A stretch of 64,000 nt of DNA, taken from the NCBI RefSeq assembly GCF_006345805.1, contig NC_043018.1, positions 28,086,001 to 28,150,000 on the forward strand, written 5' to 3'. This document shows positions 12,152 to 55,632 of the stretch, piece by piece (within the stretch, counting starts at the first letter, position 1; each line of letters begins with the position of its first letter). The translations under genes and the position numbers were made by a program. This stretch comes from Octopus sinensis (taxonomy: Eukaryota). Below the pieces are notes generated by a model. That model had not been told where the DNA came from, ran no database searches, and saw only the letters and a program-made list of their open reading frames with translations.

Positions 12152-12498
12152 ACTGGGCTTACAAAGAATAAGTCCCGGGGTTGATTTGCTCGATTAAAGG
12201 CGGTGCTCCAGCATGGCCGCAGTCAAATGACTGAAACAAGTAAAAGAGTAAAAGAGAGATATAGACAAACTAGAAAAGATTGTGATGTTGGTGGTAATTT
12301 GCTAAAATTTTAATTAGTGTTGCCACAGGAATAGTTGTTTTATTTATAAATCTGACATATAATGAGCTAATAATAACACCGTTGACAATATTTGCTAGTG
12401 AGGTACTTATGTAACGCTGTCATTACTTAGGATTGTGTAAGCACTAACAGCTGTGGACTTGACTTCTTTTCAACTGTAAACTCATTGTTTATTTGCAG

Positions 12499-12692
12499 AA
12501 GTAAACGGTTTGCTGACACAACCTGGGAAAACACAACTTTACGTTTTTGAAGCACCATTCTTAGGAACACGTGACCCTTCATGCAAGGTTTTTCCTTATC
12601 AATCAGGAGTGAATTTTTTGAGAGATATGAACTCCGGGCTCGTAGGTCCAATAATAATCTGCAAAAAAGGAGCCACGTCTTTCCACAATATG
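12499..12692 (+). CDS. Multicopper oxidase exon (domain 3, C-terminal part)
   Basis: Acceptor TTTGCAG|AA (phase 1, matches previous donor); donor ATG|GTAGGT (phase 0). Translation VNGLLTQPGKTQLYVFEAPFLGTRDPSCKVFPYQSGVNFLRDMNSGLVGPIIICKKG matches the Cp motif DP.C....Y.S.V....D..SGL.GP..IC.KG. Confidence 0.92.
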
Positions 12693-12855
12693 GTAGGTAT
12701 AATTGTAAAAAAGAATTAATTTCAACACTTCAGAACCTACTATTTATTCATTTTTTTTTCACTTTCCCAAGTACAAAAAAATGGCAGCAAGATTACGGAA
12801 CCATTAGCACATGCTTTGTGTCATTTCTTCCGGTTCTTAATATTCTAAGTTCAAA

Positions 12856-18608: not shown

Positions 18609-18796
18609 GTATATGTATATATCTATATATATATATGTATGTATATTAATGTATATATATGAATATATATATATGTAAGTATATTTAGGTACATATATGT
18701 ATATTTATGTATGTATGCATGTATGTATATATGTGTATATATGCATATATATACATACATATATGCATATATATATATATGTATGTGTATCTACAC

Positions 18797-23272: not shown

Positions 23273-23814
23273 GTAGGTCCTATTTGCTCGTATTCTTCAG
23301 CCAGTCTCTGTGTGTGTATGTTAGAGCACTTGTGTCTATATATGTGCATGTGTGTGTATGTGAGTGTGTCTGTGATCATGTGTGTGTGTTCGTGCGTGAG
23401 TGTGCACATGTATACATAAATATATACATATATAAGTCTCTGTGCGAGTGCGTGTATGCATGTATGTATGTATGTATGTATGTATGTATGTATGTATGTA
23501 TGTATGTATGTATGTATGTATGTATGTATTTATGTATGTATGTATGTATGTATGTATGTATGTATGTATGTATTTATGTATGTATGTGTGAGTGTATGTG
23601 AGTGTGTGTGTATGTAGGTTTATATGTACGCATGTACATATGTATATATATAGAAGAGATAGTGTAAAATTTGGATTCAGACAATTAAGCAGTACTCGCT
23701 GTAAGCTCGGCATTCAGAATCCGCTATCAGTTTGCGTCGAAACCATTCACCCTGTATCGTAATGTAATGTGCCCCATGTAACTGAAAATCATAGAATATC
23801 CGAACAATAAATTT

Positions 23815-25430
23815 ATTCTCCTATGTTCTTCTTTTACGTTGATCCTGTTGTCACCAGGGCATGCTATTCGATTATCATGCATGTTCTTTCGTTTTTTATT
23901 CACCACAACAATGTTCGGTTTCCGATGTCTGGTCAGGTGATTGCACTGGATCATTGCACCCCACAGGATTTTGCAATTCTCATTTTTGGCGACTCCTGAA
24001 ATTTTCTCATACCAGGTATTTGCTTTTTGTAGGCCGTGATTTCCACAGAGCTCCCAATGGATCATTCTTGCCTCATTGTCATGGCGTCTTTTGTATTCGC
24101 GTTGTGCAAATTTCGGGCATTCGCTAACGATGTGCCATACCGTTTCACCCCTCTCAGCACACATTCTGTCACTACCGGTAGTGCTGTCTATTCTGCACTT
24201 CATATAATTGATCCTTATTGCTTGTTCTTAAGCTGCGCATATGAATGCTTCTGTCTTTATCTTCAGGTCACATCTCCTCATCCATAGCCACCGGTCCTCT
24301 GTATCTGTCTTGGCGTTCACATCTCTTGCAAACTGACCGTACATTTTCTTTTCCTTCCATGCTGTTTCCTTTTTTTTTTGTTTTGTGCAGTTCGTGTTTA
24401 AATTTTTCTTTAGTTACGCAATTTTCAATTTCGATGACGCCGGCCTTCGTGTGTTTCAACAGTGGCTCCACAGCATTTTTATATACCACCCTATGCTGTT
24501 TTCCTCTCCTTCGGTACAGTCCTGGCAACTGATCAAACCTATCTCCCCCTTTCTGGACAAGTACGGCTTATCGGTGTCACTCTTAGTGTGGAAGTCTCCG
24601 TGTACTGTGAACATTTTTCTGGTCATGGTGTCCATTTTCTTCATTTCTCTCTTTTGCCATTTTATAATTCCCGCTCCATACCAAAGTGATGCTATCGCCC
24701 ACGTATTAACTGCTTGGATTTTATTCTATCCTATCAATTTTGAGCGCAACACCAATCTCAGTCTTCGGAAATATTCCATCCTTAGTTGCTCTTTCATTTC
24801 CTTTTCCATTATATCGTTGAACTCTAGTACACCAAGATATTTCTATTCTTCCGTTTCAAGTTACTTAATCACGTCCCTATTCGGTAATTCTATCCCTGCT
24901 AGGGACTGTACCTTGCTTCTTGTTATTGGTGGATTATTCCACACTTCTTGAGTCCAAATTCCATTCTAATAACAATACTAAAACAATGGACCGTTTTCAC
25001 CAAGGAACTCACTTGGGTCTCATCTTTGCCATACAGTTTCAAATCACCCATGAGAGGAGGTGGTTGATTGTTTGAGATTTTTCCTTTAGTTGGTTCCCCA
25101 GGTTCATTTTCCTAAATACCATGATCAGGATTATCATGCAGGGAAGAAAAAGCAACGGAGATAGGCTATCACCTTGGGAAATCCCTTTCTGATACCCAGG
25201 GTACCCAAGCTTTTCTTGTAAGTAAGATGTCAGTTCAGTTTTCCATCCCACCATACCTCTCTTCAGGAAACACGGTACATTCCTCGCAATTCCAAACACA
25301 TCGAAGCACTCGATGATCCACGAATGTGGACTCATATCATAAGCTTTACGATAGTCAATCCAGGCCATTCCCAGATTTGTTCTCCTTTGTTTACAATCTT
25401 GCATTACCATTTTGTCTATTAATAGTTGAT
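23815..25430 (-). mobile_element. Degenerate R4/Dong-type LINE fragment A (RT, CCHC knuckle, start of REL)
   Basis: [16 protein letters not shown]...[13 protein letters not shown] (RT); HTKSDTDKPYLSRK; ETVWHIVSECPKFAQREYKRRHD; HRKPNIVVVNKK. Multiple stops and frameshifts. Confidence 0.88.
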
Positions 25431-29260: not shown

Positions 29261-29786
29261 GTTTATAAATTTATAAATAAGGATAATATCGATATTTAAA
29301 TATCGATATTATCAAGTGACCAGCATGGGAAAAAATACCATACAAAGGTAATAATTTTTTACAACTAAAAATAAGGGTGTCTTAAACATTTAAGGTGTTT
29401 TTTAGAGTCAACGATTTGACTGCTATTTCGGCATGGTGGTGTCTCTCAGACACCCTTATTTTTAGTTATATATATATATACATGTTTTAGCCAGAGAAAT
29501 GTTTTTTTGACAATAAACACATCTAAAGTAAAGTTTTTTCATTAACCTCCAGAATACTTCCCTGGACGCCCAATTTATTGTGTGAACCCCAAAATCTTAT
29601 ATGGTACCCCTGGGGACATGTGGGCTCCTACTAAGAACTGGGCTTAGTGACTAAATCCTTCAAGACGTCTTAAGTCTGAAGAAATATATATTATACATAG
29701 ATATCATTGTACGCTTTCTAGAAATTTGACCGAGTCTTATGACGTCAACAACGTTCTTTATGTATTTGTTTTTTAATCCTGTCTAG

Positions 29787-30115
29787 GTAACCTAATGTTC
29801 ACTATCAACGGTCGAATCTATGGTAACAATCGAGGACTGGTTATGAAGACCCACGAACGTATCGCCTGGTATATAATGTCCCACGGCGGCGATAAAGATG
29901 TCCACACAGCACACTTCCACGGCCAGACTTATCTGCAACGCTTCGATGGCTTGCATAAAGGAGATGTTCTCGAGGTTTCTGCAGACACTGCCAAAACGGT
30001 GGAGATAAAAGCTGAAAATCCGGGCAAGTGGATATTACATTGCCATGTGAATGAACATATCATCGGTGGTATGGAGACAGCTTACACAGTCCTGGCACCC
30101 GGAGAGCATTTATAA
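29787..30115 (+). CDS. Multicopper oxidase terminal coding exon (domain 6; type-1 and trinuclear Cu ligands; stop TAA)
   Basis: Acceptor CCTGTCTAG|GT (phase 1). Translation has DVHTAHFHGQ and WILHCHVNEHIIGGM (the canonical MCO signatures H-x2-H-F-H and H-C-H-x3-H-x4-M) and ends APGEHL*. The seven exons total 2059 nt = 1 nt + 686 codons, so the frame is consistent throughout. Confidence 0.96.
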
Positions 30116-30208: not shown

Positions 30209-30214
30209 AATAAA
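30209..30214 (+). terminator. Candidate polyadenylation signal AATAAA for the oxidase mRNA
   Basis: First AATAAA after the stop codon, about 95 nt downstream. Position only; no transcript evidence. Confidence 0.35.
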
Positions 30215-30321
30215 TGGAAAAGACAAAAAAGTATATTGTAATTGCTGATTTGTTGATATTTAGAAAAAAGATATTGATTATATATATGCATATGTATAAG
30301 TATGTATGTATGTATATATAT

Positions 30322-30377
<56 letters not shown>

Positions 30378-30845
30378 TCTGTTTGTGAGAGGGTAAGTAT
30401 GCGTGCATGTATTTTTATCTATGTATACAAATATATACATGCCCGTATATGTATTTATATATGTGTGTGGTGTGTGTGTGTAAACATATCTATCTATCTA
30501 GCTATTATCTATGTATATATCTATATATATACATACATATATATACATATACATATATATATATATATATATATAATAGAAATATTAAAATTACTAAGTC
30601 TCTCTAAAAGAGAACAACGGCAGCGTTTCCGGAAAATAATAGTTATCGCCATACTAATATGGCATTCTTATAAAAATAAGAATAAAGCTGTCCGCTTATT
30701 AGCTCCATGAGGCCATCGCCTTAAGAGAGACTTAGTAATTTTAATATTTCTATTATTGAAAACAAGTGGATGTATTCCACCGAAGCTAGGTAAATAAAAC
30801 CTTCGAACAGAGATTGTCGGAAGCGACACCTACTGGTCTGGCTAC

Positions 30846-30887
30846 GCTGCATTGAAAAGGGGCAATACCCCGAAACGCGTCTGTAGC
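30846..30887 (+). ncRNA. Minimal type I hammerhead ribozyme motif, U3-A8 core variant, GUC cleavage triplet (predicted cut after 30881)
   Basis: GCTGCA (stem I) TTGAAAA (core) GGGG-CAATA-CCCC (stem II) GAAA CGCG T C TGTAGC (stem I partner, 6 bp with one G-U). Stem III is the palindrome ACGCGT. Confidence 0.72.
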
Positions 30888-31053
30888 TGCCGGTCAAGTA
30901 GTGTGGAGCGACTGACCTCCCTTGTTCGAAGGTTATATGGATACAGTTTGTGTATCAAATAGCTAACTTAAGGCGATGGCCTCATGGAGCTAATAAGCGG
31001 ACAGCTTTATTCTTACTTTTATAAGAATGCCATATTAGTATGGCGATAACTAT

Positions 31054-31158
<105 letters not shown>

Positions 31159-31208
31159 GAAAAAACAAGTCAAAAATAGAAAATGCTAAAATAATTTTAT
31201 AGTGAACA

Positions 31209-31252
31209 TTTCAGTACCGGTTTCGGTCATTTTGAGACCTATTCAACTGTAA
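31209..31252 (-). ncRNA. Hammerhead-like motif in left pLTR (core UUGAAUA, position 8 mutated)
   Basis: TTACAG TTGAATA GGTC-TCAAAAT-GACC GAAA CCGG TA CTGAAA; palindromic stem III ACCGGT. Confidence 0.5.
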
Positions 31253-31579
31253 CGATTAAATAATTAAATTTGGAAAAATTAGAAGAAAGGTTTTTTTAAA
31301 GGAATATTTCTATAGTAGTGTTCAGATTTAAGTGGCATTCTGCCTTTCTCTGACTCCCTTGTTTGCACTTGTGTGTTGGAGGTCGTTGTGAGTTCTTGGT
31401 AGGGTAGTAGAGGAAGAAGGCTGGTGAGGAAAGGGGGTGGGAGAATCTGGGAGTGCCCTGATGGTCGTATTTTGAATGGTCAGTGGCGGCACCATCCTCC
31501 ACCCTCCTAAAAAAAGACCACAGAATGAACACAATCCTCCAAACACACGATCATAAAAAGCAAGAGACAGTCTAAATCC

Positions 31580-32050
31580 ATGAAAAGTCTCCTAACACAA
31601 GCCCGAATTCACTCTTCAACACAGAAGCCGACAGTAAAAAAATGTGGAAGACCTAATTGCGGGATATGCGACTATCTAATTGAGGGATCAGAGTTCTCCT
31701 TCAAACAGGGACAACGGTTTACAGTGAAAAGCAACTTCACATGTGCTTCGGAGAACCTAATATACTCACTAACCTGCTCCGGGTGTCAAGAGCAGTACAT
31801 AGGCCAAACAAAAAATAGTTTGCGTAAACGAATGGCCCTGCACAGATCCCAGATAAAAATTCCCCAAAAGAGAAAAATAGCTTTTAGCCAACACATAGAT
31901 ACTTGCGCCAACAAAAAAACACCAAGCTTCAGGATTTTCCCCCTCTACCAATTTAGGGACGATACAACCTCGAGACAATGAATAAGTAAAGAAACTCTCT
32001 TTATTGCAAAATACAGGCCACTTCTTAACGGGTCTACGATAAACAATTAA
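31580..32050 (+). pseudogene. Penelope GIY-YIG endonuclease domain with one premature stop
   Basis: KCGRPNCGIC...CASENLIYSLTCSGCQEQYIGQT..LRKRM..H; after TGA (31979-31981) the frame continues ISKETLFIAKYRPLLNG, the usual PLE end. Confidence 0.88.
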
Positions 32051-33019
32051 TATACCTCAACTTTAGAATAAAAGAAATATTCACACACAAATATTACATT
32101 CCAAAGAATCCATTACTAATCACAGCTAAAATCACAGCTATAATCCATAACATACCAACTTCAAGTCATACAACACCTCACTACTTTAACCCATTCATAT
32201 TCTCCCTTCTCTGTTTTTTTCTTCTTCTTCCTCTTCTTCTTCATCATCATCATTATCATCATCATCGTCGTCATAATCATCACCACCATCACCATCATCG
32301 TCATCTTCTCCCTCTCCTTCTCCTTCTTCTTCTTCATCATCATCATCATCAACATCGTCATCTTCTTCTTCTTCTTCTTCTTCTTCTTCTTCTTCTCTTC
32401 TTCTTCTTCTTCTTCTTCTTCTTATTCTTCTACTTCTCCACCTCCTACCCCTTAACTTTGCCACTAATGTTTTTTAGTATAACACCTACGCAAATTCTAT
32501 AAACAAGCCTGTCAATATAAATATTCTCCTGAATTGAACTGCGACTGCCAGCCGCCACTGACCATTCAAAATACGACCATCAGGGCACTCCCAGATTCTC
32601 CCACCCCCTTTCCTCACCAGCCTTCTTCCTCTACTACCCTACCAAGAACTCACAACGACCTCCAACACACAAGTGCAAACAAGGGAGTCAGAGAAAGGCA
32701 GAATGCCACTTAAATCTGAACACTACTATAGAAATATTCCTTTAAAAAAACTTTTCTTCTAATTTTTCTAAATTTAATAATTTAATCGTTACAGTTGAAA
32801 AGGTCTCAAAATGACCGAAACCGGTTCACTATAAAATTATTTTAGCATTTTCTATTTTTGACTTGTTTTTTCATATATATCAACTCGTGTGTTCCTTTTC
32901 ACCCTTATACATATATTTATATATATATACACATACATATATATATACACATACATACACATACATACATAAAGTTACTTATATGTAAATGTGTATATAT
33001 ATATACACACACACACACA

Positions 33020-53600: not shown

Positions 53601-55632
53601 TTCCCCCATAAATTTTTGTTCATAGCGCTATTTGAAACCAATATTAGCCGGGGGAACTAGTCGATTAGATCGACCCCAGTACGCAACAGGTACTTAATTT
53701 ACCGATTCCGAAAGGATGAAAGGCAAAGTCGACCTCGGTGGAAATTGAAGGCACGAGCTGGCAGAACCGTTACCATGCCGGTAAAAATACTTAGTAGTGT
53801 TTCGTCCGTCTTCATATTCTGAGTTCAAATTTCGCCGAGGTCGACATTGCCTTTCATGCTTTCCTGAATCAATGAAATCAGTACTACTTGATGTAATCGA
53901 GTTAACAACTCCCCCTCCCCATATTGCAGGCATTGTGCCGAAACTTGAAACCAATGACCGGTGTTGAGGTGTTTACCTCCCCGAAATCGAGCGACTCGGC
54001 AAAAGTGGGCGATAGAATATGTACCAAGCGGGAAATTAAAGTACTAGAGTGTATTTGTTCGTGTGAGATTCTTCTAGACGGTGCTCCAGCATGGCAGCAG
54101 TCTAATCATTGAAACAAGTGATAAAGAAAAACATAAAAACAAAAGATATATAACTCTGTTTCATGGTTTGTCGTTGAATCGCTTGTGCCGTTTACTCATG
54201 GCGGACGAGATGTCGCAATATCATTTCGAGTATTCTTTAATCTTTGTTAGGACCCATACAGTTACGACATATGCATTACTGTCTAAATATGAGAAACGCA
54301 TTACAAGTGTGAGGTGTGAAATTCATGTAATCAGTTGATGTTATGCTAAAGTTCAGAGAATTTATAGTAAAAGATAAAACGAAAGTTTCGTAACAGCAGA
54401 GAAATTAAACAGTAAAATGATACGACAATGAAAAACTCTGAAAGTTAATATGGCTGATAGCATAATAGTAAGAATATCCATTAAATGTAGCTTTATGAAG
54501 CATCAGATAACATCAAGCATAGTTCAGAAATAAGATAGGCATCTTGAGGTAGAATTAAAAGTTAGAGAAATAGCAATGAAAACCCGATGTGATGTAAATA
54601 ACTTTATTAGCCTAATACATCTAGCTGATTAAGCATAATTTATCGCTTCGTCTTATTTTACTTTAGGTCACTGTCTGTGGCTGATATACTTCTTGGTTAT
54701 TGCCTAAAAGGCTTTCATTTTGCTGTTATATTGTATTGACCCAATAGTTTTGGCAACCTATTTGTTTTATTCAAGTTAAAATAAAAGCAGCCTAGCATTC
54801 AGAGTAGAGGCCATTGTGTTGCACCGTCCGAAGTCACCCTTTTTCCTGTTCTTTGATTCAACGTTCATACCGGTTCTTGTCCTTCGAGGAGGCAAAAACT
54901 CCTTCGTTGAAGCTTCCACCACCGCTTGGTTGATGAAACGTCACGAATGCACGAAGTGAGCCATTGATTGGATCCCATTAACAGAGCCCGCGCTGTTGCA
55001 AGAATTCAGACCAGGTCTTTTATGGGTAACATCTCAACTGGTGTTTCGTTTCTTGTTTCCGAATACAGAAATTTATAAAAATGGAAAAATATAGAAAGGT
55101 TTGTAATAACATGGGCACACCTATAATTAAAAATACTACAGGAATTTCTACCATGTTGTAGTGTTTGAATAAGGATTCGAATATGGATTCGAAAAACTCG
55201 CTTTGCAACCGTTTGATTTCGAGTTCAATCCTACAGCATGGCGCCATGGGCAAATGTCTTCTACAATAAACACAGGCCAGGAAATGGCTTTTGGATGAAT
55301 GTGGTAGACAGAAAATTCTATGGTGTCTATCCTCTTGAAATAAAAACTGTTTATCTTCTGTCTGGAATTCAAAAACATGTTTTTGACTCCCAGACAGAAG
55401 ATAAACTGTTTTTACTTCAAAGTTTTATAAATTTTTACTGATATTTGATAAGATGAGATTCATAATTGAAACCGATAATATTTTCTTTATATAATTTTTA
55501 AAATGATTTTATTAAATTCCTTCTTAAATCGAAATACGTTAGATTTACTTCTGTGCTATTTCCATCTCTGTCTTTTATAAGTAAAAGTTCTATTTTCAAA
55601 CATATATATATATTATATATATATATATATAT

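What the first reader, a model, noticed from the sequence alone, without database searches (positions are those of the whole stretch)
30846..30887. Intact variant-core hammerhead ribozyme in sense orientation just 3' of the oxidase gene
Seen: every element of a minimal type I hammerhead is present, including a 6-bp stem I, a 4-bp G-C stem II, GAAA, a GUC triplet and a self-complementary ACGCGT in place of a stem III hairpin. The core is UUGAAAA, i.e. the C3-G8 tertiary pair is co-varied to U3-A8. Established: Penelope-associated minimal hammerheads with palindromic stem III have been reported to cleave as dimers, and U3-A8 is a tolerated covariation. Inference: it lies 730 nt after the stop on the mRNA strand, so read-through or long-3'UTR transcripts could self-cleave, affecting termination or mRNA stability of the host gene.
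Basis: partly seen in the sequence, partly recalled or inferred. Interest (0 to 1): 0.7.

Follow-up and report, generated by a model that had tools for sequence, protein, structure and literature searches.

The report
Retroelement-borne hammerhead ribozyme motif in octopus
The hammerhead ribozyme motif is really there, but it is the ribozyme module of a small, recently inserted Penelope/retrozyme-type mobile element in the Octopus sinensis genome, and nothing shows that it regulates the neighbouring ferroxidase gene.

Summary
It is not a chance match. Shuffles give 0.007 strict hits per window. Reversed cephalopod sequence gives none, against three real strict-plus-palindromic hits in 155 kb.

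The O. bimaculoides ortholog locus holds two more such hammerheads, one with the same UUGAAAA core. A lake metagenome contig holds a 580-nt tandem repeat whose canonical-core hammerhead has the identical helix II and loop 2.

The motif caps an imperfect hairpin inside a 484-bp composite (30573-31056) inserted in a (TA)n microsatellite. The composite is one + strand unit plus an inverted partial copy that spans the unit's end-to-start junction. This implies a tandem or circular template of about 363 nt. The two copies meet at a shared palindromic CTTAAG.

These are Penelope-like-element insertion signatures, and a GIY-YIG Penelope remnant lies 100 bp away in the same microsatellite. The copies differ by about 1.6%, against about 10% between species, so the insertion is young.

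There is only one hammerhead here and its helix III is 1 bp, so efficient cleavage in place is unlikely. A host-gene role is unsupported. It is a new member of a known kind.

The parts
30846..30887 (+). Type-I hammerhead ribozyme motif. Helix I GCUGCA/UGUAGC, core UUGAAAA (U3-A8), helix II GGGG-CAAUA-CCCC, GAAA, palindromic ACGCGU as a 1-bp helix III plus tetraloop, C17. Predicted cut between 30881 and 30882.
   Evidence: Chance estimates.
30838..30893 (+). Extended helix I: closing stem CUGGC (30838-42) / GCCGG (30889-93), with an internal loop of 5' UAC (30843-45) against 3' U (30888). This is the position of the loop-1 element of canonical metazoan type-I hammerheads.
   Evidence: Fold. The same layout occurs in O. 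bimaculoides L003 18669-18727 (GUGGC-UAU...U-GCUAC), L004 (UAUC/UU) and the Schistosoma-derived N79 (GUAC/UCCA).
30799..30936 (+). Imperfect hairpin ('rod') whose tip is the hammerhead. Helix I continues into arms of about 47 nt.
   Evidence: (-65 kcal/mol). A parallel rod is seen at the second UUGAAAA hammerhead, L003 12155-12502.
30721..31056 (+). Direct (+) copy of the element: B' (30721-30756), u1, hairpin with hammerhead, u2, A' (30967-31056). It ends ...CTATTAT against (TA)n.
30573..30725 (-). Inverted partial copy: B (30573-30608, the reverse complement of B', 35/36), s (30609-30635, unique), A (30636-30725, the reverse complement of A', 89/90). It equals the reverse complement of A'-rc(s)-B', so it spans the end-to-start junction of the unit. 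It starts ATAATAG next to (TA)n. It meets the direct copy at the shared palindrome CTTAAG (30720-30725).
30506..30572 (.). Left (TA)n-rich flank of the composite, read as the target microsatellite.
31057..31151 (.). Right (TA)n flank of the composite. It separates the composite from the neighbouring Penelope-like remnant.
31152..32879 (+). Context, not part of the hammerhead element. This is a 5'-truncated Penelope-like element remnant with a GIY-YIG ORF at 31580-31981 carrying a C-x4-C-x2-C linker. It is flanked by inverted copies of its own end (31152-31490 / 32551-32879, 96-98.5%) and sits in the same TA-rich tract. It has no hammerhead and no sequence similarity to the composite.
29786..30115 (+). 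Context: last coding exon and stop codon of the hephaestin-like ferroxidase gene (Octopus sinensis XP_036368009.1). AATAAA is at 30209-30214.

Best explanation
The motif is the type-I hammerhead module of a short, non-coding retroelement of about 363 nt, of the animal non-LTR retrozyme / Penelope pseudo-LTR kind. Penelope-like-element machinery copied it into a (TA)n microsatellite downstream of the Octopus sinensis hephaestin-like gene.

What is shown:
- The motif has every sequence and pairing feature of metazoan type-I hammerheads, with the documented U3-A8 core covariation.
- Octopus DNA holds other such hammerheads far above chance.
- The 484-bp composite is one + unit plus an inverted partial copy that spans the unit's junction.
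- Both outer ends read CTATTAT against (TA)n.
- The two copies meet at a palindromic CTTAAG.

What is inferred:
- At master loci, tandem units are transcribed and neighbouring hammerheads pair through their palindromic helix III. They cut after C17 and release unit-length RNAs that can be circularised.
- A tandem or circular RNA was then reverse-transcribed from both nicked strands of the TA tract, starting at two CUAUUAU sites 63 nt apart (the Penelope 'tail').
- The two cDNA ends annealed at CTTAAG.
- The copy in this window is a solo, probably dead-end insertion. It has one hammerhead, a 1-bp helix III and no partner in cis, so it should cleave poorly if at all. It most likely has no role in the host gene.
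For: - Motif anatomy.
- Not chance: 0.007 strict hits per window in shuffles. The reversed-sequence control gives 0, against 3 real strict-plus-palindromic hits in 155 kb.
- Other octopus copies: L003 12290-12336 has the same UUGAAAA core at the tip of a rod with 139-nt arms. L003 18677-18721 has a canonical core and the same UAY/U internal loop.
- L004: a 580-nt tandem repeat (531/532 identical), GC 42%. Its canonical-core hammerhead has the identical GGGG-CAAUA-CCCC and a palindromic tetraloop.
- Literature: a 6-bp helix I, 4-bp helix II and 1-2-bp helix III with a palindromic loop acting as dimers; U3-A8 in Schistosoma Penelope-like elements (PMC4209133). A single-pair helix III with a palindromic tetraloop in amphibian retrozymes (PMC7229834).
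- Composite anatomy.
- Penelope-like-element signatures from the literature: an inverted 5'-truncated copy, a one-sided tail, (TA)n targets (PMC8557442). Both strands cleaved and extended, and two internal RT start sites that define the tail (PMC11167929).
- The inferred circular unit folds at -119.6 kcal/mol, z = -6.2, GC 41.6%.
- Youth: 1/90 and 1/36 mismatches between the copies, against about 10% between species.
- A Penelope-like GIY-YIG remnant with its own inverted copy sits in the same TA tract.
- Solo retrozyme monomers are common and dispersed (bioRxiv 10.64898/2026.07.22.740005).
Against: - No second copy of this particular element was found in about 200 kb of cephalopod sequence. 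The three octopus hammerhead elements share nothing outside the core. The 363-nt tandem or circular unit therefore rests on this one locus.
- The 90-nt near-perfect terminal inverted repeats in a TA context also fit a DNA-transposon MITE.
- The orthologous site in O. bimaculoides is an assembly gap, so an empty site could not be shown.
- The other hammerheads were found with a descriptor that demands the pairings, so helix covariation among them is partly built in.
- No Rfam support.
- Neither activity nor transcription was tested.
Confidence: 0.7

Rival explanations
1. The hammerhead is a working part of the ferroxidase gene: read-through or long-3'UTR transcripts self-cleave at 30881/30882, which promotes termination or changes mRNA stability.
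For: - The motif is in the sense orientation, 731 nt after the stop codon.
- Helices I and II stay folded in the context of the whole foldback.
- The palindromic helix III could pair between two transcripts.
Against: - The AATAAA at 30209 lies in the block shared with O. bimaculoides, which ends at 30279. The motif is about 570 nt beyond that block.
- The insertion is young and lineage-specific by arm divergence.
- There is a single hammerhead with a 1-bp helix III. Single motifs of this class were inactive and dimers weak in vitro (PMC4209133).
- In Anolis, no RNA-seq reads ended at the Penelope-like-element hammerhead cut site (PMC11167929).
- The same kind of motif sits in introns of the ortholog with no link to 3' ends.
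Confidence: 0.04
2. The 421-484-bp foldback is a DNA-transposon-derived MITE or foldback element, or a local palindromic duplication. The hammerhead-like tip is a coincidence or an inert relic.
For: - It has 90-nt terminal inverted repeats at 99% identity with TA-rich flanks, as in Stowaway-type MITEs.
- If helix I comes for free from a hairpin, the remaining motif is expected 1.24 times per window, or 0.18 times with a palindromic helix III.
- No other copy was found, and there is no Rfam hit.
Against: - The 1.24 per window applies anywhere in the window, not at a hairpin tip.
- The reversed-sequence control keeps hairpins and still gives 0 hits.
- Several features were not in the descriptor and still match real hammerheads: helix I of exactly 6 bp, the UAC/U internal loop, G10.1-C11.1, and loop 2 CAAUA identical to that of a tandem-repeat hammerhead.
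- A coordinated C3U+G8A change in an otherwise intact core is unlikely by decay.
- The B-s-A arrangement outside the left repeat is not explained by a simple terminal-inverted-repeat element.
Confidence: 0.15
3. If the region is transcribed, what matters at this locus is the 90-bp near-perfect double-stranded stem. It would serve as a hairpin-RNA source of small RNAs or as an ADAR editing substrate, and the hammerhead would be incidental.
For: The foldback folds at -243 kcal/mol, z = -27.6, with 90-bp arms at 99%.
Against: There are no expression data. The near-perfect arms are best read as a by-product of the insertion rather than as a selected structure. This is an add-on to the best explanation rather than an alternative to it.
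Confidence: 0.1

Closest known systems
Canonical metazoan type-I hammerheads of non-LTR retrozymes and satellite repeats (newt/axolotl HHR_Amex1, Schistosoma Sm-alpha; PMC7229834, PMC7761336)
   Same: - 6-bp helix I followed by an internal loop with 5' UAC.
- 4-bp helix II with an A-rich loop CAA(A)UA.
- Helix III of one base pair capped by a palindromic tetraloop, so a dimer is needed.
- The unit has low GC (41.6%), carries no ORF, and is predicted to fold as a highly paired circle.
- Solo monomers are known.
   Different: - The core is U3-A8 instead of C3-G8.
- Loop 2 is one A shorter than in Schistosoma.
- The 3' side of loop 1 is a single U.
- At this locus there is no tandem array. There is one unit plus an inverted partial copy, so the tandem or circular unit is inferred and not seen.
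[quoted passage not shown]
   Same: - U3-A8 covariation.
- Palindromic 15.2-16.2 positions and loop 3.
- G10.1-C11.1 pair.
- Mostly dispersed single motifs, sometimes as nearby inverted pairs.
- Insertion signatures of Penelope-like elements: an inverted truncated copy, a one-sided tail, and a (TA)n target (PMC8557442, PMC11167929).
   Different: - Helix I (6 bp) and helix II (4 bp) are of the canonical type. They are not the short helix I and long 6-8-bp helix II with a bulged base after A9 that typify the minimal hammerheads.
- The element has no RT/GIY-YIG ORF.
- The adjacent GIY-YIG remnant is unrelated in sequence and has no hammerhead.
Hammerheads in 3' UTRs of mammalian Clec2-type genes (Martick et al. 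2008; own knowledge, cited in PMC4209133)
   Different: Those ribozymes are conserved among species, lie inside the mature 3' UTR and form a complete three-helix ribozyme. Here the motif is young, lies beyond the conserved poly(A) signal and lacks a stable helix III.
Stowaway-type MITEs / foldback DNA elements
   Same: Long near-perfect terminal inverted repeats, small size, a TA-rich insertion site and no ORF.
   Different: - An inverted segment outside the left repeat duplicates internal sequence (B/B').
- A complete hammerhead sits at the tip.
- No further copies were seen in about 200 kb.

Membership tests
Hammerhead ribozyme, type I | Conserved core C3-U4-G5-A6-N7-G8-A9 ... G12-A13-A14 ... 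N-U-H17 | tested here: met
   The core reads UUGAAAA ... GAAA ... GUC. All invariant positions are present except 3 and 8. These are changed together to U-A, which keeps the 3-8 pair. That covariation is documented in natural Penelope-like-element hammerheads (PMC4209133) and recurs in L003 12290-12336.
Hammerhead ribozyme, type I | Three helices around the core with helix I open; G10.1-C11.1 closing helix II | tested here: met
   Helix I is 6 bp and helix II is 4 bp with G10.1-C11.1. Both are in the minimum-energy fold. Helix III is only A15.1-U16.1 plus the palindromic loop CGCG, which is the usual metazoan state (PMC4209133, PMC7229834). It becomes a 6-bp helix only in a dimer.
Hammerhead ribozyme, type I | Loop 1 / loop 2 tertiary-contact elements of canonical animal hammerheads | tested here: inconclusive
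   The 5' UAC internal loop after exactly 6 bp, and loop 2 CAAUA, resemble N79 (GUAC, CAAAUA), L003 18669-18727 (UAU, AAAUAA) and L004 (UAUC, CAAUA).
Hammerhead ribozyme, type I | Score above the Rfam gathering threshold for a hammerhead model | tested here: not met
   No hit at the gathering threshold or at E<=10. The canonical-core tandem hammerhead of L004 is missed too. The models do not cover this short-helix-III class, so the failure says little.
Hammerhead ribozyme, type I | Site-specific self-cleavage after H17 | not testable with these tools
   This needs in vitro transcription of monomer and dimer constructs.
Animal non-LTR retrozyme | Tandem repeats of about 150-600 bp, each with a type-I hammerhead | tested here: inconclusive
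   There is only one hammerhead at the locus. The inverted partial copy spans the unit's end-to-start junction, which implies a tandem or circular template of about 363 nt. No array was seen.
Animal non-LTR retrozyme | Non-coding, GC below 45-50%, RNA circle predicted to be highly self-paired | tested here: met
   There is no ORF within the unit. GC is 41.6%. The circular fold is -119.6 kcal/mol, z = -6.2. For comparison, the L004 unit has GC 42% and a rod-like fold.
Animal non-LTR retrozyme | Expressed as circular RNA | not testable with these tools
   No transcriptome data were available.
Penelope-like element (as the mobilising system) | Insertion signatures: an adjacent inverted 5'-truncated copy, a one-sided 30-40-bp tail, and a (TA)n or AT-rich target | tested here: met
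   An inverted partial copy lies at 30573-30725. There is a one-sided extension of 63 nt (s+B), which is longer than the usual tail. (TA)n lies on both sides. The criteria come from PMC8557442 and PMC11167929.
Penelope-like element (as an autonomous member) | ORF with a reverse transcriptase and a GIY-YIG endonuclease | tested here: not met
   The composite has no such ORF. The GIY-YIG ORF at 31580-31981 (Pfam 6e-5) belongs to a separate remnant with no sequence similarity.
MITE (Stowaway-like) | Terminal inverted repeats, a TA target duplication, and many dispersed copies bounded by the repeats | tested here: inconclusive
   Terminal inverted repeats are present (90 nt, 99%). A duplication cannot be read inside (TA)n. 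No other copy was found in the window, L003, L005 or L006. The B/B' arrangement is unexplained by this model.

The most novel reading that the evidence does not exclude
Despite being a young solo insertion, the hammerhead cleaves read-through transcripts of the hephaestin-like gene. It would do so as a trans-dimer through ACGCGU, or with host factors. This would give the gene a ribozyme-assisted termination or decay step, a mobile-element ribozyme caught at the start of domestication. A milder variant is more likely, at about 0.35: octopods carry active U3-A8 hammerhead retrozymes, and their insertions bear Penelope-type double-strand-priming footprints. That would be structural evidence that retrozymes ride on Penelope-like elements.
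Probability: 0.04. Interest if true: 0.65.

Novelty: new member of a known kind. Interest (0 to 1): 0.3.

Why it matters
It adds cephalopods to the animals known to carry type-I hammerheads of the retrozyme/Penelope kind. It also shows the U3-A8 core variant recurring outside flatworms.

The composite gives an unusually readable insertion footprint: an inverted junction-spanning copy, matching CTATTAT ends in a TA tract, and a palindromic CTTAAG joint. This fits the recent proposal that animal retrozymes are mobilised by Penelope-like elements.

For annotation, it is a caution. A complete-looking ribozyme next to a gene can be mobile-element cargo and not a gene part. In addition, Rfam models miss this whole class.

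Tried and rejected
- **Rfam.** Searches at the gathering threshold and at E<=10 found no hammerhead. The L004 positive control was also missed, so these negatives were set aside.
- **Exact-protein look-ups.** Look-ups of the GIY-YIG ORF and of the last-exon ORF found nothing on record.
- **GIY-YIG homologues.** A homologue search gave only two metagenomic fragments, L001 and L002. These are internally deleted Penelope-like pieces, and my scan found no hammerhead in them.
- **Link to the neighbouring remnant.** I tested whether the composite is the pseudo-LTR of the neighbouring GIY-YIG remnant. There is no sequence similarity.
- **Orthologous site in O. bimaculoides.** Alignment stops at window position 30279, and the site falls in a 2861-N assembly gap. 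Presence or absence could not be decided.
- **Argonauta hians locus.** Only the exon aligns, and there is one weak hammerhead-like candidate.
- **O. sinensis upstream 24 kb (L006).** It holds no further hammerhead and no orthologues of the two O. bimaculoides elements, because that part of the gene lies outside the locus.
- **Other collections.** Scans of bacterial/archaeal genomes and of viral contigs with the motif pattern gave 0 hits.
- **SINE or tRNA origin.** ARAGORN found nothing.
- **Covariance model.** MAFFT misplaced loop 2 and helix III, so I used a scripted structural table instead.
- **Tandem Repeats Finder on L004.** It found nothing because the 580-nt period exceeds its 500-nt limit. 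The period was checked directly.
- **Literature.** The paper that measures C3-G8 exchanges (PMC1986816) is not held, so the catalytic cost of U3-A8 is not quantified here.
- **Other near-motifs in the window.** 12707-12757 (-) and 55440-55482 (+) are low-complexity, AT-only helices. 27767 (-) and 62051 (-) have canonical cores but no proper helix II. All four were rejected.

Full report
**1. Where the window comes from**

The window is Octopus sinensis chromosome sequence: GCA_006345805.1, CM016880.1, where window position = L006 position - 24221. The 'oxidase' is the hephaestin-like ferroxidase XP_036368009.1. Its last seven coding exons match the window at about 100% identity, and the stop codon ends at 30115. 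The region is very rich in TA and TATG microsatellites and in retroelement debris.

**2.

Read directly and found independently by my own descriptor, 30846-30887 (+) is:

GCUGCA | UUGAAAA | GGGG-CAAUA-CCCC | GAAA | CGCG | UC^ | UGUAGC

- This gives a 6-bp helix I, a 4-bp G-C helix II closed by G10.1-C11.1, and the palindrome ACGCGU in place of helix III.
- The cut site is predicted between 30881 and 30882.
- The core differs from CUGANGA only by the paired change C3U/G8A.
- RNAfold keeps helices I and II in the best fold of the motif alone, of the 146-nt hairpin and of the full foldback. Two copies pair through ACGCGU.

**3. It is more than chance**

- In 300 dinucleotide shuffles of the window, with all four Watson-Crick 3-8 cores allowed, the strict motif (helix I >=6 bp, helix II >=4 bp) appears 0.007 times per window. 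It never appears with a palindromic helix III.
- Helix I here is part of a longer hairpin, so I also used a control that keeps hairpins. Reversed sequences of 155 kb of cephalopod DNA give 0 lenient, 0 strict and 0 strict-plus-palindromic hits. The real sequences give 6, 4 and 3.
- Rfam finds no hammerhead at the gathering threshold or at E<=10. It also fails on a textbook canonical-core tandem hammerhead (L004). This negative result therefore carries no weight for hammerheads with a 1-bp helix III.

**4. Relatives elsewhere**

A scan of metagenome contigs with YTGANRA-GGGGCAATACCCC-GAAAC found one contig, from a lake metagenome. It carries two copies 580 nt apart in a tandem repeat (531/532 identical, GC 42%), each reading:

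UCCUAA | CUGACGA | GGGG-CAAUA-CCCC | GAAA | CUAG | UA^ | UUAGGA

This is a canonical-core type-I hammerhead with the identical helix II and loop 2. It also has features the search pattern did not ask for: a 6-bp helix I, a palindromic tetraloop and a UAUC/UU internal loop.

The O. bimaculoides ortholog locus (L003) holds two more strict hammerheads, both in introns.

- 12290-12336 reads GAGAAA | UUGAAAA | GUCA-CAACAA-UGAC | GAAA | CAUCGAUG | UC^ | UUUUUC. It has the same variant core and sits at the tip of a rod with 139-nt arms that are 77% complementary.
- 18677-18721 reads CGGACG | CUGACGA | AGGG-AAAUAA-CCCU | GAAA | CUCGAG | UC^ | CGUUCG. It is enclosed by GUGGC-UAU ... U-GCUAC. This is the same closing stem and UAY/U internal loop as here (CUGGC-UAC ... 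U-GCCGG).

The Schistosoma-derived N79 ribozyme, printed in PMC12550524, has GCAG-GUAC-AUCCAG ... GUCC-CAAAUA-GGAC.

These hammerheads were found with a descriptor that demands the helices, so helix covariation among them is partly built in. Features outside the descriptor were not demanded:

- the exact helix lengths;
- the loop-1 UAY;
- the A-rich loop 2;
- the palindromic helix III.

Outside the core, the three octopus elements share no sequence. This matches the 'extreme sequence variability' reported for Penelope-like-element hammerheads (PMC4209133).

**5. What the literature says about this architecture**

- Metazoan type-I hammerheads have a 6-bp helix I, a 4-bp helix II and a helix III of 1-2 bp capped by a 2-4-nt palindromic loop. 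They act as dimers in tandem transcripts (PMC4209133).
- Amphibian retrozyme hammerheads have a single-pair helix III with a palindromic tetraloop (PMC7229834).
- U3-A8 was found as a natural covariation in Schistosoma Cercyon Penelope-like elements, with about 1300 genomic hits.
- Single minimal motifs showed no detectable cleavage, and dimers showed low activity.
- In an Anolis Penelope-like element, a C3G/G8C double mutant partly restored cleavage. Hammerhead-dead mutants still inserted, and no RNA-seq reads ended at the cut site (PMC11167929).

**6.

The motif is the tip of an imperfect hairpin at 30799-30936. That hairpin lies inside a composite bounded on both sides by (TA)n. The segments are:

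| Segment | Coordinates | Relation |
|---|---|---|
| B | 30573-30608 | |
| s | 30609-30635 | unique |
| A | 30636-30725 | |
| B' | 30721-30756 | reverse complement of B, 35/36 |
| u1 | 30757-30798 | |
| hairpin with hammerhead | 30799-30936 | |
| u2 | 30937-30966 | |
| A' | 30967-31056 | reverse complement of A, 89/90 |

- The right part (B'-u1-hammerhead-u2-A') is one + strand unit.
- The left part (B-s-A) is the reverse complement of A'-rc(s)-B'. It is therefore a copy of a segment that runs from the end of the unit into its beginning.
- One template explains everything only if it was longer than one unit, that is, tandem or circular, with a period of about 363 nt.
- Both outer ends read CTATTAT (ATAATAG on the left) against the TA tract.
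- Both A' and B' begin with the palindrome CTTAAG, and this is exactly where the two copies meet (30720-30725).
- The inferred circle is non-coding, has GC 41.6%, and folds at -119.6 kcal/mol (z = -6.2).

**7. How this fits Penelope-type integration**

Penelope-like elements:

- prefer (TA)n or AT-rich targets;
- are heavily 5'-truncated;
- often carry an inverted 5'-truncated copy at the 5' side;
- show a one-sided 30-40-bp 'tail' (PMC8557442).

A purified element cleaves and extends both DNA strands and starts reverse transcription at two nearby internal RNA sites, and those sites define the tail (PMC11167929).

My inference is as follows. Two cDNAs were primed from the two nicked strands of the TA tract, at two CUAUUAU sites 63 nt apart on a tandem or circular RNA. 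They grew towards each other and annealed through their self-complementary CTTAAG ends.

About 100 bp to the right, in the same TA tract, lies an independent Penelope-like remnant with the same inverted arrangement:

- It has a GIY-YIG ORF at 31580-31981 (Pfam 6e-5), preceded by a C-x4-C-x2-C linker.
- It is flanked by inverted copies of its own end (31152-31490 / 32551-32879, 96-98.5%).
- Its closest relatives are metagenomic Penelope-like fragments.
- It has no hammerhead and no similarity to the composite, so it is a neighbour and not the parent.

Animal retrozymes have recently been argued to be non-autonomous derivatives of Penelope pseudo-LTRs, and dispersed solo monomers are common (bioRxiv 10.64898/2026.07.22.740005; PMC7761336).

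**8. Age and host relevance**

- The duplicated parts differ at 2 of 126 positions. Flanking non-coding DNA differs by about 10% between O. sinensis and O. bimaculoides. Barring gene conversion between the arms, the insertion post-dates the split of the two species.
- Interspecies similarity in the 3' flank ends at 30279, about 70 nt after the AATAAA at 30209. The mature mRNA therefore probably ends well before the motif.
- The orthologous site itself could not be read, because O. bimaculoides has a 2861-N gap there.

**9. Verdict**

The motif is a genuine type-I hammerhead of the retrozyme/Penelope kind with the known U3-A8 variant core. It is carried by a young, solo, inverted-composite insertion in a TA microsatellite.

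It has only one hammerhead and a 1-bp helix III, so efficient self-cleavage in place is unlikely. A role in the ferroxidase gene is unsupported, though not excluded.

The main uncertainty is that the 363-nt tandem or circular unit, and hence the retrozyme label, rests on this one locus. A MITE reading keeps about 15%.

It is a new member of a known kind. Interest is modest, mainly for the clean insertion footprint and for the recurrence of UUGAAAA-core hammerheads in octopods.

Noticed in passing
window 31152-32879: A 5'-truncated Penelope-like element remnant. It has a GIY-YIG ORF at 31580-31981 with a C-x4-C-x2-C linker, and it is flanked by about 340-nt inverted copies of its own end (31152-31490 / 32551-32879). 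It is inserted in the same TA tract as the hammerhead composite. No hammerhead was detected in it.
   Followed up: partly
L003 12290-12336 and 18677-18721 (O. bimaculoides CM046622.1, introns of the HEPHL1 ortholog): Two further strict type-I hammerheads with a palindromic helix III. One has the same UUGAAAA core and sits at the tip of a 348-nt rod (12155-12502). The other has a canonical core and the same UAY/U loop 1. Together with the window copy, this makes roughly one hammerhead per 40 kb of the octopus DNA sampled.
   Followed up: partly
L004 1-1112 (contig TBL_comb47_HYPODRAFT_10135176, lake metagenome): A 580-nt tandem repeat (531/532 identical) with a canonical-core type-I hammerhead in each unit. 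This looks like a retrozyme from an unidentified freshwater animal present in a bacterial-metagenome assembly.
   Followed up: partly
window 30700-31000 and L004: Rfam 15 hammerhead models detect neither the variant-core motif nor the canonical-core tandem hammerhead of L004, even at E<=10. Hammerheads with a 1-bp helix III appear to fall outside the models' reach.
   Followed up: yes
window 4347-30115; P0004 compared with P0272: The O. sinensis gene model is 784 aa, against 1091 aa in O. bimaculoides. Its first 98 residues do not map to the window or to ferroxidase homologues, so the model is probably truncated at the N-terminus or chimeric.
   Followed up: no
window 23727-25410 (-): Fragments of a LINE-type reverse transcriptase lie in an intron of the ferroxidase gene. 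The Pfam RVT_1 match scores 25 bits, below the family cut-off.
   Followed up: no
window 30636-30725 / 30967-31056: If transcribed, these arms form a 90-bp near-perfect RNA duplex. That is a plausible substrate for A-to-I editing or small-RNA production in an animal known for heavy RNA editing.
   Followed up: no
window 32195-32464 (-): An ORF of almost pure Glu/Asp/Arg low complexity lies on the strand opposite the Penelope-like remnant's 3' region. It is probably a translated simple repeat (GAA/GAT).
   Followed up: no
L005 16195-16238 (-) (Argonauta hians): A weak minimal-hammerhead-like candidate: CUGAAGA plus a bulged A, a 6-bp helix II and a 4-bp helix I. It was not assessed further.
   Followed up: no
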